DNA of 64,000 bases from Octopus sinensis (taxonomy: Eukaryota): contig NC_043001.1 of NCBI RefSeq assembly GCF_006345805.1, positions 75,082,001 through 75,146,000 on the forward strand, given 5' to 3'. Below are positions 1,069 to 54,168 of this stretch, one piece after another. The notes beneath the pieces are model-generated. The model had not been told where the DNA came from and did no database searches. It saw only the letters and a list, made by a program, of their open reading frames with translations. Position numbers and translations under genes: made by a program. The first letter of the stretch is position 1, and each line of letters starts with the position of its first letter.

Positions 1069-1207
1069 TCGTAGCCCAACATCCGGCAGAGCACGTGGGC
1101 ATTTTCATTGTCCCAGTAATCACTGCATACACTGCCCCATCCACTTCCAAGAGACACCTCCACTTGGCCTTCATTCTCTAGCTCTCCGTAATTCAATCTA
1201 ACCTTCT
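1069..1207 (-). CDS. SRCR gene coding exon 13 (SRCR6 first half, [46 protein letters not shown])
   Basis: 139 nt; CTTTCCACTGCAG / GTATGT; phase 1-2; its partner exon must lie left of the window. Confidence 0.95.

Positions 1208-54168: not shown

What the first reader, a model, noticed from the sequence alone, without database searches (positions are those of the whole stretch)
1069..54168. Hidden 13-exon signal-peptide/tandem-SRCR gene spread over 53 kb
Seen: 13 small exons (13-173 nt) splice in frame to 563 codons. Each SRCR domain is a phase 1-2 exon plus a phase 2-1 exon, and the domains abut with no Ser/Thr linker. Known: group A SRCR domains have 6 Cys and are usually split over two exons; more than four domains argues against lysyl-oxidase-like proteins. 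Inference: a secreted or surface pattern-recognition or protease-associated protein that annotation pipelines may fragment.
Basis: partly seen in the sequence, partly recalled or inferred. Interest (0 to 1): 0.7.

Follow-up and report, generated by a model that had tools for sequence, protein, structure and literature searches.

The report
Split-exon tandem SRCR gene, octopod

Summary
All exons have AG/GT splice sites. Every domain is a phase 1-2 exon followed by a phase 2-1 exon. Domains S1-S4 each pass Pfam SRCR on their own, and S5 is cut by the window edge.

The N-terminal domain S0 has no Pfam hit. It is supported as a degenerate SRCR relative by profile-profile comparison (E=1.2e-4) and by its exon structure.

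The key evidence is an Argonauta hians protein of 263 aa. It aligns end to end with model residues 1-264 at 56% identity, and its locus carries the same 11 exons in the same order. Nine exon lengths are identical, including the 13-nt ATG exon. dN/dS is about 0.14.

The Argonauta annotation splits this gene into two models inside domain S2, so the fragmentation prediction holds there.

The product is a signal-peptide, linker-free, group-A-type multi-SRCR protein. A binding role is inferred, not shown. The canonical cation-binding acidic residues are mostly absent. The C-terminus lies outside the window.

This is a new member of a known kind, of modest interest.

The parts
54169..54290 (-). Conserved non-coding stretch directly upstream of the ATG. 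Presumed core promoter and short 5'UTR; includes TATATGTAAT about 50 nt before the ATG.
   Evidence: blastn against the Argonauta locus gives 71.7% over 106 nt. Introns do not align apart from repeats. The promoter role is inferred.
54156..54168 (-). E1: first coding exon, 13 nt ATGCTATCTATCT (M L S I + 1 nt), donor GTAAGT, ends in phase 1.
   Evidence: On sequence alone it is one of 388 possible ATG..GT phase-1 starts. The Argonauta model has a homologous 13-nt exon, ATGTTACGTGTTT|GTAAGT.
49566..49613 (-). E2: 48-nt exon, phase 1->1. Encodes the hydrophobic core and the A-x-G cleavage motif of the signal peptide ([16 protein letters not shown]).
   Evidence: The Argonauta orthologous exon is also 48 nt. 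This is the only strongly hydrophobic 19-mer in the model (Kyte-Doolittle 1.68). SignalP was not available.
44021..44162 (-). S0a: first half of a degenerate SRCR-like domain, phase 1->2. Ends ...ICHSKGY + 2 nt, like every other first half.
   Evidence: No Pfam hit. The Argonauta ortholog is 142 nt, 41% aa identity, omega about 0.43. The S0 exon pair ranks first of 417 null exon pairs. hhalign E=1.2e-4.
42098..42258 (-). S0b: second half of the degenerate domain, phase 2->1. Has 5 Cys and ends ...VRCVN + 1 nt.
   Evidence: The Argonauta ortholog is 161 nt, 47% aa identity, with all Cys conserved. In 1.84 billion representative proteins the only true hit is the Argonauta protein.
41345..41480 (-). 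S1a: SRCR domain 1, first half, phase 1->2.
   Evidence: S1 scores 54.7 bits on Pfam SRCR. Argonauta ortholog is 136 nt, 73% aa identity.
36006..36160 (-). S1b: SRCR domain 1, second half, phase 2->1.
   Evidence: Argonauta ortholog is 149 nt, a difference of two codons, 61% aa identity.
31811..31946 (-). S2a: SRCR domain 2, first half. Lacks Cys C3 and carries VEVLFNGQW.
   Evidence: S2 scores 41.6 bits on Pfam SRCR. Argonauta ortholog is 139 nt, 68% aa identity, and also lacks C3. The Argonauta 263-aa model stops here by reading through the donor G|TAA.
28272..28423 (-). S2b: SRCR domain 2, second half. Lacks Cys C8.
   Evidence: Argonauta ortholog is 152 nt, 56% aa identity, and also lacks C8. 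The second Argonauta gene model starts at an internal Met in this exon.
26663..26795 (-). S3a: SRCR domain 3, first half. Contains SRGRVEI.
   Evidence: S3 scores 78.3 bits. Argonauta ortholog is 133 nt, 72% aa identity.
19063..19226 (-). S3b: SRCR domain 3, second half.
   Evidence: Argonauta ortholog is 164 nt, 65% aa identity, omega about 0.09.
14145..14283 (-). S4a: SRCR domain 4, first half.
   Evidence: S4 scores 96.7 bits. Argonauta ortholog is 139 nt, 73% aa identity, omega about 0.10.
4894..5066 (-). S4b: SRCR domain 4, second half. The longest exon (173 nt), with a weak donor GTTTGT.
   Evidence: The Argonauta counterpart lies beyond the fetched locus, so this exon has no cross-species check.
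1069..1207 (-). S5a: SRCR domain 5, first half. Ends in phase 2, so the gene continues to the left of the window.
   Evidence: It is 52% identical to S4a. No cross-species check was possible.

Best explanation
The window carries the 5' part of one protein-coding gene of an octopod-like cephalopod, on the minus strand: promoter-proximal region, ATG and 13 exons.

The product starts with a cleavable signal peptide, split over a 13-nt and a 48-nt exon. It continues as a chain of SRCR domains joined head to tail with 1-3-residue junctions. Each domain is encoded by two exons with a phase-2 intron after the LGY motif, and neighbouring domains are separated by phase-1 introns.

The domains in order:
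- S0: a degenerate SRCR-derived domain with a rewired cysteine pattern.
- S1, S3 and S4: standard six-cysteine group-A-type domains.
- S2: a domain that has lost the C3-C8 disulfide.
- S5: only its first half is in the window.

The rest of the gene lies to the left of the window. By analogy with Argonauta it would be roughly 370 more residues, all SRCR.

What is shown: the exon structure, the domain identity, conservation under purifying selection, and that this is one gene rather than two.

What is inferred: the protein is secreted into the extracellular space or haemolymph. It acts as a multivalent binding protein, as other soluble multi-SRCR proteins do. It probably does not use the canonical acidic cation-binding cluster.
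For: Exon chain and phases.

Pfam SRCR: E=1.4e-82 for the model, and S1-S4 each pass the cut-off singly.

PDB sequence search: best single-domain matches for S4 are group A domains, namely M2BP 93 bits, neurotrypsin 90, MSR1 86 and MARCO 79. DMBT1 scores 74.

Ortholog: Argonauta hians Ahia01_000514800 (P0027) is 56% identical over model residues 1-264 and starts at the same Met.

Argonauta locus L001:
- The same 11 exons occur in the same order.
- Nine of the eleven exon lengths are identical. The other two differ by 3 or 6 nt.
- The phases are the same.

Selection: pN 0.24 against pS 0.70, so omega is about 0.14. S0a and S0b have omega 0.2-0.4.

One gene, not two:
- The Argonauta split falls inside domain S2.
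- Model 1 ends by read-through of the conserved S2a donor.
- Model 2 starts at an internal Met of S2b.
- The joint loss of C3 (in S2a) and C8 (in S2b), which pair with each other (PMC3100851), spans the split in both species.

Secretion: the only hydrophobic segment is the N-terminal one, with a conserved A-x-G|Q motif.

S0 as an SRCR derivative:
- Top of 417 null exon pairs.
- hhalign E=1.2e-4 over 83 columns, in register.
- Same terminal motifs, C-x3-G-Y and [IV]-R-C-x-N, at the same splice phases.
Against: - No transcript data were available, so the splicing rests on sequence logic plus one other species' model. That model came from a pipeline combining ab initio, RNA-seq and homology evidence (PMC12682272).
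- S0 has no Pfam hit and no SRCR hit in PDB by profile search. The single-sequence AlphaFold model was useless, with pLDDT 39.9.
- S4b and S5a have no cross-species check.
- The C-terminus is unseen, so a membrane anchor or a catalytic domain cannot be excluded from the window itself.
- The acidic residues that bind cations in DMBT1 and MARCO (D-D-E of site 2; PMC7043408) are complete in none of the domains: S3 has 2 of 3 and S4 has 1 of 3. This weakens a simple 'works like DMBT1' reading.
Confidence: 0.85

Rival explanations
1. There are two separate genes, as annotated in Argonauta. The first would be a small secreted protein (signal peptide, S0, S1 and half of S2). The second would be an SRCR protein starting in S2b.
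For: The Argonauta hians annotation lists two adjacent same-strand models of 263 aa and 670 aa.
Against: - The break lies in the middle of a single SRCR fold.
- Model 1 terminates only because the reading frame runs through a perfect, conserved GTAAGT donor (AC|G TAA GT).
- Model 2 would lack a signal peptide and would begin with half a domain.
- The phases of S2a (ends in phase 2) and S2b (starts in phase 2) match in both species.
- The paired cysteines C3 and C8 are lost together across the supposed gene boundary.
Confidence: 0.05
2. The locus is a decaying pseudogene or a set of exon relics that merely look spliceable.
For: There is no transcript evidence. S0 and S2 depart from the SRCR consensus. 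S4b has a weak donor, GTTTGT. No close protein from the window's own species turned up in the protein collection.
Against: - All 13 exons are open and all splice sites are canonical.
- Exon lengths are conserved to the base in 9 of 11 compared exons, and the other two differ by multiples of 3.
- Omega is about 0.14 while synonymous sites are saturated.
- The departures in S0 and S2 are themselves conserved in Argonauta.
- The region upstream of the ATG is conserved.
Confidence: 0.05
3. The SRCR array is the N-terminal arm of an enzyme or receptor whose catalytic or anchoring part lies to the left of the window. Candidates are a LOXL-type amine oxidase, a neurotrypsin or TMPRSS-type serine protease, or a transmembrane scavenger receptor.
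For: The window ends in mid-domain, so the C-terminus is unknown. LOXL2 and neurotrypsin are among the closest solved group A relatives.
Against: - There are already 5.5 SRCR-type domains, whereas LOXL2-4 have four.
- The Argonauta downstream model of 670 aa has only SRCR-type Pfam hits on record: no lysyl oxidase, trypsin, CUB, ZP or kringle.
- A transmembrane segment or GPI signal would not show up in Pfam, so membrane anchoring remains open.
Confidence: 0.15

Closest known systems
Argonauta hians Ahia01_000514800 (263 aa) plus the adjacent 670-aa SRCR model on BAAFZT010000023.1
   Same: This is the ortholog. It is 56-61% identical in protein sequence and has the same 11 exons in the same order. 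Exon lengths and phases are the same, including the 13-nt ATG exon. The unusual cysteine patterns of S0 and S2 are shared, and the sequence upstream of the ATG is conserved.
   Different: It is annotated as two genes. Its introns are about half as long: about 21 kb against 40 kb from E1 to S4a. It carries an extra S4b-like pseudo-exon in the S1 intron that the window lacks.
Group A SRCR domains of vertebrates (M2BP/LGALS3BP, neurotrypsin, MSR1, MARCO, SCARA5, LOXL2)
   Same: Six cysteines with no C1 or C4, two exons per domain, and the best single-domain sequence matches (PMC3100851, PMC10855680).
   Different: Those proteins have one to four SRCR domains combined with collagenous, BTB-type, kringle-protease or lysyl-oxidase parts. 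Here at least 5.5 domains sit in a bare, linker-free array behind a signal peptide. One domain lacks a disulfide and one is degenerate.
Soluble or membrane multi-SRCR proteins of group B (CD163, DMBT1/SALSA, CD5L, SSC4D/SSC5D)
   Same: Tandem arrays of SRCR domains. They give the highest summed scores (CD163 467 bits) and are the top database hits, named DMBT1-like or SRCRB4D-like. S2a carries the DMBT1 bacteria-binding pattern VEVLxxxxW exactly. S3a has an R-G-R at the position of MARCO's RxR motif.
   Different: Group B domains have eight cysteines and one exon per domain. DMBT1 has Ser/Thr/Pro-rich spacers plus CUB and ZP domains. The acidic cation-binding residues that are functionally required in DMBT1, MARCO and CD6 are mostly replaced here.
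Invertebrate SRCR-only proteins (sea urchin and sponge expansions)
   Same: Signal peptide plus SRCR-only architecture, varied cysteine patterns, and lineage-specific evolution (PMC10855680).
   Different: That paper reports one exon per domain in the sea-urchin cluster it examined and three exons per domain in sponge. This gene has two per domain. No tandem gene cluster is visible in this window: there are no other SRCR exons on either strand.

Membership tests
SRCR superfamily (Pfam PF00530) | Domain of about 100-110 aa matching the SRCR profile above the curated cut-off. | tested here: met
   S1 54.7, S2 41.6, S3 78.3 and S4 96.7 bits against a cut-off of 26.1. The whole model scores E=1.4e-82. 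S5a matches the first half only.
SRCR superfamily (Pfam PF00530) | The same profile match for the N-terminal domain S0. | tested here: inconclusive
   No Pfam hit even at E<=10 and no SRCR hit in PDB by profile search. In its favour: hhalign of the two-species S0 profile against the SRCR profile gives E=1.2e-4 over 83 columns, the pair is first of 417 null exon pairs, and exon lengths, phases and end motifs are the same as in the other domains.
SRCR group A | Six cysteines (C2-C7, C3-C8, C5-C6), with no C1 or C4. | tested here: met
   Alignment A2 shows no Cys at the C1 or C4 columns in any domain. S1, S3 and S4 have all six. S2 has four, with C3 and C8 both lost. S0 has six, but C2 is lost and one extra Cys is present. 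The definition is from PMC3100851.
SRCR group A | Each domain is encoded by two exons. | tested here: met
   All 5.5 domains are split after the LG[YF] motif by a phase-2 intron. The same holds in Argonauta.
SRCR group B (CD163, DMBT1, CD5/CD6) | Eight cysteines, and one exon per domain. | tested here: not met
   C1 and C4 are absent, and each domain has two exons.
DMBT1/SALSA-like | SRCR domains separated by Ser/Thr/Pro-rich spacers, with C-terminal CUB and ZP domains. | tested here: not met
   Junctions are 1-3 residues long. No CUB or ZP domain is on record for the Argonauta downstream model. The window's own 3' end was not seen.
LOXL2-4 | Exactly four group A SRCR domains followed by a lysyl-oxidase catalytic domain. 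| tested here: not met
   At least 5.5 SRCR-type domains lie in the window. The Argonauta downstream model has no PF01186 hit on record. The catalytic domain cannot be tested directly in this window.
SRCR-serine proteases (neurotrypsin, hepsin/TMPRSS) | A C-terminal trypsin-like protease domain. | not testable with these tools
   The 3' end lies outside the window. Indirectly, the Argonauta 670-aa model shows only SRCR-type Pfam hits.
Secreted protein (classical signal peptide) | An N-terminal hydrophobic core followed by small residues at positions -3 and -1. | tested here: inconclusive
   Judged by eye and by a hydropathy scan only. The sequences are [18 protein letters not shown]|Q and, in Argonauta, MLRVCTLLVVIFLGGAAG|Q. 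No SignalP run was possible.
Cation-dependent SRCR ligand-binding site (SALSA/MARCO type) | Acidic cluster D-D-E (site 2) plus D-D-N (site 3) at conserved positions. | tested here: not met
   Alignment A2. CDD becomes CDS, CAD, CYT, CSR and CSD in the different domains. LDDV becomes HQNV, LSNI, LKHS and LGDM. The E of HSED is kept only in S3. Residue definitions are from PMC7043408.

The most novel reading that the evidence does not exclude
An octopod-lineage protein of about 930 aa, made only of SRCR domains, whose domains have been rewired. S0 has lost C2 and gained a compensating cysteine, so it is no longer recognisable by Pfam. S2 has lost the C3-C8 disulfide. The canonical cation-binding cluster is largely gone. 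This would imply a ligand-binding mode unlike that of DMBT1, MARCO or CD6. The gene would also be systematically missed or split by cephalopod annotation: only one partial relative was found in 1.84 billion representative proteins.
Probability: 0.3. Interest if true: 0.4.

Novelty: new member of a known kind. Interest (0 to 1): 0.3.

Why it matters
For biology, it adds one well-defined multi-SRCR gene of group A type to the thin record of cephalopod SRCR genes. It also shows two conserved departures from the SRCR cysteine framework that could be used to study how the fold tolerates disulfide loss.

For genome annotation, it is a clean, checkable case in which a published cephalopod annotation cuts a gene in the middle of a domain. 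The cause is small exons separated by long, repeat-filled introns. It also shows that a 13-nt initiator exon can be real.

It does not open a long-standing question.

Tried and rejected
1. Searching for a single-exon signal peptide upstream of S1a found nothing convincing. The signal peptide is split over E1 and E2.

2. E1 cannot be justified from the window alone. There are 388 ATG..GT phase-1 candidates, 74 of them with strong donors. It is accepted only because of the Argonauta homologue.

3. HMMs built from the window's own half-domains rank S0a 49th and S0b 53rd among six-frame segments. Half-exon searches therefore do not find S0. Only the spliced pair stands out.

4. The first protein search with S2-S5a gave only generic SRCR hits of 27-43% identity and missed the Argonauta 670-aa model. 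Absence from that search is therefore not evidence of absence.

5. A repeat ORF used to identify the organism had no homologues. Exact-product look-ups of three window ORFs found nothing. Rfam and tRNA scans were empty.

7. The exhaustive search with S0b returned the Argonauta protein plus one spurious summed hit to a chitin-binding-like repeat protein.

8. AlphaFold on P0027 without an alignment gave pLDDT 39.9 and was not used. The MAFFT alignment of exon pieces to P0027 misplaced S0a and E2 and was dropped.

9. The S0 profile searched against PDB gave no SRCR hit.

10. Repeat ORFs that looked like transposase or reverse-transcriptase pieces were not confirmed by Pfam. Only a Pif1 2B helicase fragment was.

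Full report
**What is in the window.**
The window is AT-rich eukaryotic DNA: 34.9% G+C, with no tRNA or Rfam hits. A six-frame search with a generic SRCR sequence found half-domain matches only on the minus strand. There are five first halves, near 41.4, 31.9, 26.8, 14.3 and 1.1 kb. There are three second halves, near 28.4, 19.2 and 5.0 kb. A fourth second half, near 36.1 kb, was found by eye and confirmed.

Each piece is bounded by a pyrimidine tract plus AG and by a GT donor. First halves start in phase 1 and end in phase 2, two bases after the LG[YF] codons. Second halves start in phase 2 and end in phase 1, just after the last cysteine.

This gave one sensible solution. Assembly reproduced the numbers exactly: 13 exons of 13-173 nt, 1691 nt, 563 codons plus two bases.

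Besides the nine clear SRCR exons, the model contains four more:
- E1 (54168-54156), a 13-nt ATG exon.
- E2 (49613-49566), a 48-nt exon.
- S0a (44162-44021) and S0b (42258-42098).

The S0 pair has the same lengths, phases and end motifs as the SRCR exons, but a divergent sequence.

**Is it more than chance?**
For S1-S4 there is no doubt. Each passes Pfam SRCR alone, at 54.7, 41.6, 78.3 and 96.7 bits against a cut-off of 26.1. The whole model scores E=1.4e-82.

For the four upstream exons the window alone is not enough:
- There are 388 possible ATG..GT phase-1 first exons upstream of E2.
- There are 435 in-frame three-exon chains under my splice filters.
- S0 has no Pfam hit.

The spliced S0 pair is, however, the top scorer among 417 phase-correct null exon pairs from both strands. 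It scores 9.3 bits and the next independent pair scores 4.4.

**The decisive evidence: an ortholog in Argonauta hians.**
A protein search with model residues 1-218 returned one protein, Argonauta hians Ahia01_000514800 (P0027, 263 aa). It is 56% identical to model residues 1-264 from the first Met onwards.

Its genomic locus, L001, carries E1, E2, S0a, S0b, S1a, S1b, S2a, S2b, S3a, S3b and S4a in the same order and strand.
- Nine of the eleven exon lengths are identical: 13, 48, 142, 161, 136, 152, 133, 164 and 139 nt.
- The other two differ by 3 or 6 nt.
- All phases and AG/GT sites are the same.
- The 13-nt exon reads ATGTTACGTGTTT|GTAAGT in Argonauta and ATGCTATCTATCT|GTAAGT in the window.
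- About 125 bp upstream of the ATG aligns between the species, including a TATATGTAAT element. Introns align only at shared repeats.

Over 457 aligned codons, pS is 0.70 (saturated) and pN is 0.24, which gives omega of about 0.14. S0a and S0b have omega of 0.2-0.4, and E2 about 0.45 on only 15 codons. The exons are therefore coding and under purifying selection in both lineages.

**One gene, mis-annotated as two in Argonauta.**
The Argonauta annotation has two adjacent same-strand models, of 263 aa and 670 aa.
- The first ends at ...ARMLSYT because the frame runs through the S2a donor (AC|G TAA GT).
- The second starts at an ATG inside exon S2b.
- The cut is in the middle of one SRCR domain.
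- The phases on either side of the cut match.
- The two cysteines that pair with each other, C3 in S2a and C8 in S2b, are lost together in both species. The pairing is taken from PMC3100851.

That annotation was made with a pipeline combining ab initio, RNA-seq and homology evidence (PMC12682272). Whether the window's own genome annotates the gene could not be tested.

**What the protein is.**
The N-terminus is the only hydrophobic segment. It has a small-residue A-x-G|Q motif that is conserved in Argonauta. This fits a signal peptide, though that was judged by eye and not by SignalP.

The domains abut with 1-3 residues between them and no Ser/Thr spacer. None has a cysteine at the C1 or C4 positions. 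S1, S3 and S4 have the six group A cysteines. The best single-domain matches in the PDB are group A domains: M2BP, neurotrypsin, MSR1 and MARCO. Six cysteines plus two exons per domain is the textbook definition of group A (PMC3100851; PMC10855680).

S0 is best read as a decayed SRCR domain:
- A two-species S0 profile aligns to the SRCR profile over 83 columns, in register, with E=1.2e-4.
- All six of its cysteines are conserved.
- C2 is missing and an extra cysteine sits between C6 and C7.

**How it most likely works.**
This part is inference. A secreted chain of rigidly abutting SRCR domains would act as a multivalent extracellular binding protein, like other soluble multi-SRCR proteins.

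Motif-level leads are:
- An exact VEVLxxxxW in S2a, which is the DMBT1 bacteria-binding pattern.
- An R-G-R before VEI in S3a, at the position of MARCO's RxR motif.

Both are conserved in Argonauta.

Against a simple transfer of mechanism: the acidic residues that hold the functionally required cations in DMBT1, MARCO and CD6 (PMC7043408) are complete in none of the domains. I put about 0.4 on a pattern-recognition or binding role, and 0.85 on the gene structure and the architecture of the product.

**What remains open.**
- The gene runs off the left edge of the window after S5a.
- By analogy with Argonauta (263 + 3 + 670, about 936 aa, with SRCR-only Pfam hits), about three and a half more SRCR domains are expected, with no protease, LOX, CUB or ZP domain. 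A membrane anchor cannot be excluded.
- S4b and S5a have no cross-species check, because the fetched Argonauta locus ends after S4a.
- The organism is not identified. It shares interspersed repeat families with Argonauta at 80-86% identity, and its introns are about twice as long. This fits a larger octopod genome.

**Verdict.**
The thing itself is a new member of a known kind: a group-A-type multi-SRCR gene. It has two conserved oddities (S0 and S2) and is a useful annotation lesson. Interest is modest.

Noticed in passing
L001 21508-21577 (Argonauta hians locus): A pseudo-exon inside the S1a-S1b intron. It has an acceptor site and 21 codons almost identical to the start of exon S4b, followed by a stop. 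It is 84.7% identical at nucleotide level to window 5001-5072, which is higher than the true orthologous exons. The window has no such copy.
   Followed up: partly
L001 10001-22498 and 24543 onwards: The Argonauta hians annotation splits the orthologous gene into a 263-aa and a 670-aa model in the middle of SRCR domain 2. The first ends by read-through of a donor site. The second starts at an internal Met.
   Followed up: yes
window 6085-6197; also 1919-1967, 6758-6824, 26198-26295, 35817-35903: A short interspersed repeat of about 110 bp. It has more than 20 copies in the 32-kb Argonauta locus at 80-86% identity (up to 94% for short cores). The repeat family is therefore shared between the two genomes.
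   Followed up: partly
window 49751-50410; also 47741-47996, 11496-11635, 10729-10820, 11956-12053, 1522-1602: A second repeat family, with several tandem or near-tandem copies in the E1-E2 intron. It reads as [30 protein letters not shown]... in one frame. It is also present in the Argonauta locus at about 70% identity.
   Followed up: partly
window 19230-19400, minus strand: A serine-codon microsatellite directly upstream of exon S3b and in the same reading frame. It makes a 137-aa ORF that runs into the exon. It is intronic, and Argonauta has nothing similar there. A gene caller could mistake it for a Ser-rich linker.
   Followed up: partly
window 58533-58925, plus strand: An ORF fragment with a Pif1 helicase 2B domain (Pfam E=1.5e-10), probably a Helitron-type transposon remnant. 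It lies upstream of the gene.
   Followed up: partly
window 12878-13225, 38710-39075 and 60592-60891, minus strand; 2532-2984 (-), 16956-17228 (+), 28993-29316 (+), 33658-34352 (+): Dispersed ORF fragments that recur within the window. One shared motif is [16 protein letters not shown]...[17 protein letters not shown], and another is ...[14 protein letters not shown].... By eye they resemble retroelement and mariner-type pieces, but none has a Pfam hit.
   Followed up: partly
window 62378-62941, plus strand: An intact 187-aa ATG ORF with no homologue in the 5.8-billion-cluster protein collection and no Pfam hit. Its origin is unknown.
   Followed up: partly
window 14296-14400 and 26800-26940, minus strand: Long (TA)n and (CA)n microsatellites lie immediately upstream of the acceptor sites of exons S4a and S3a. 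Microsatellites are abundant throughout the introns.
   Followed up: no
search behaviour: The word-index protein search with S2-S5a did not return the Argonauta 670-aa SRCR model, although that model shares long exact words with the query. A negative result from that tool should not be read as absence.
   Followed up: no
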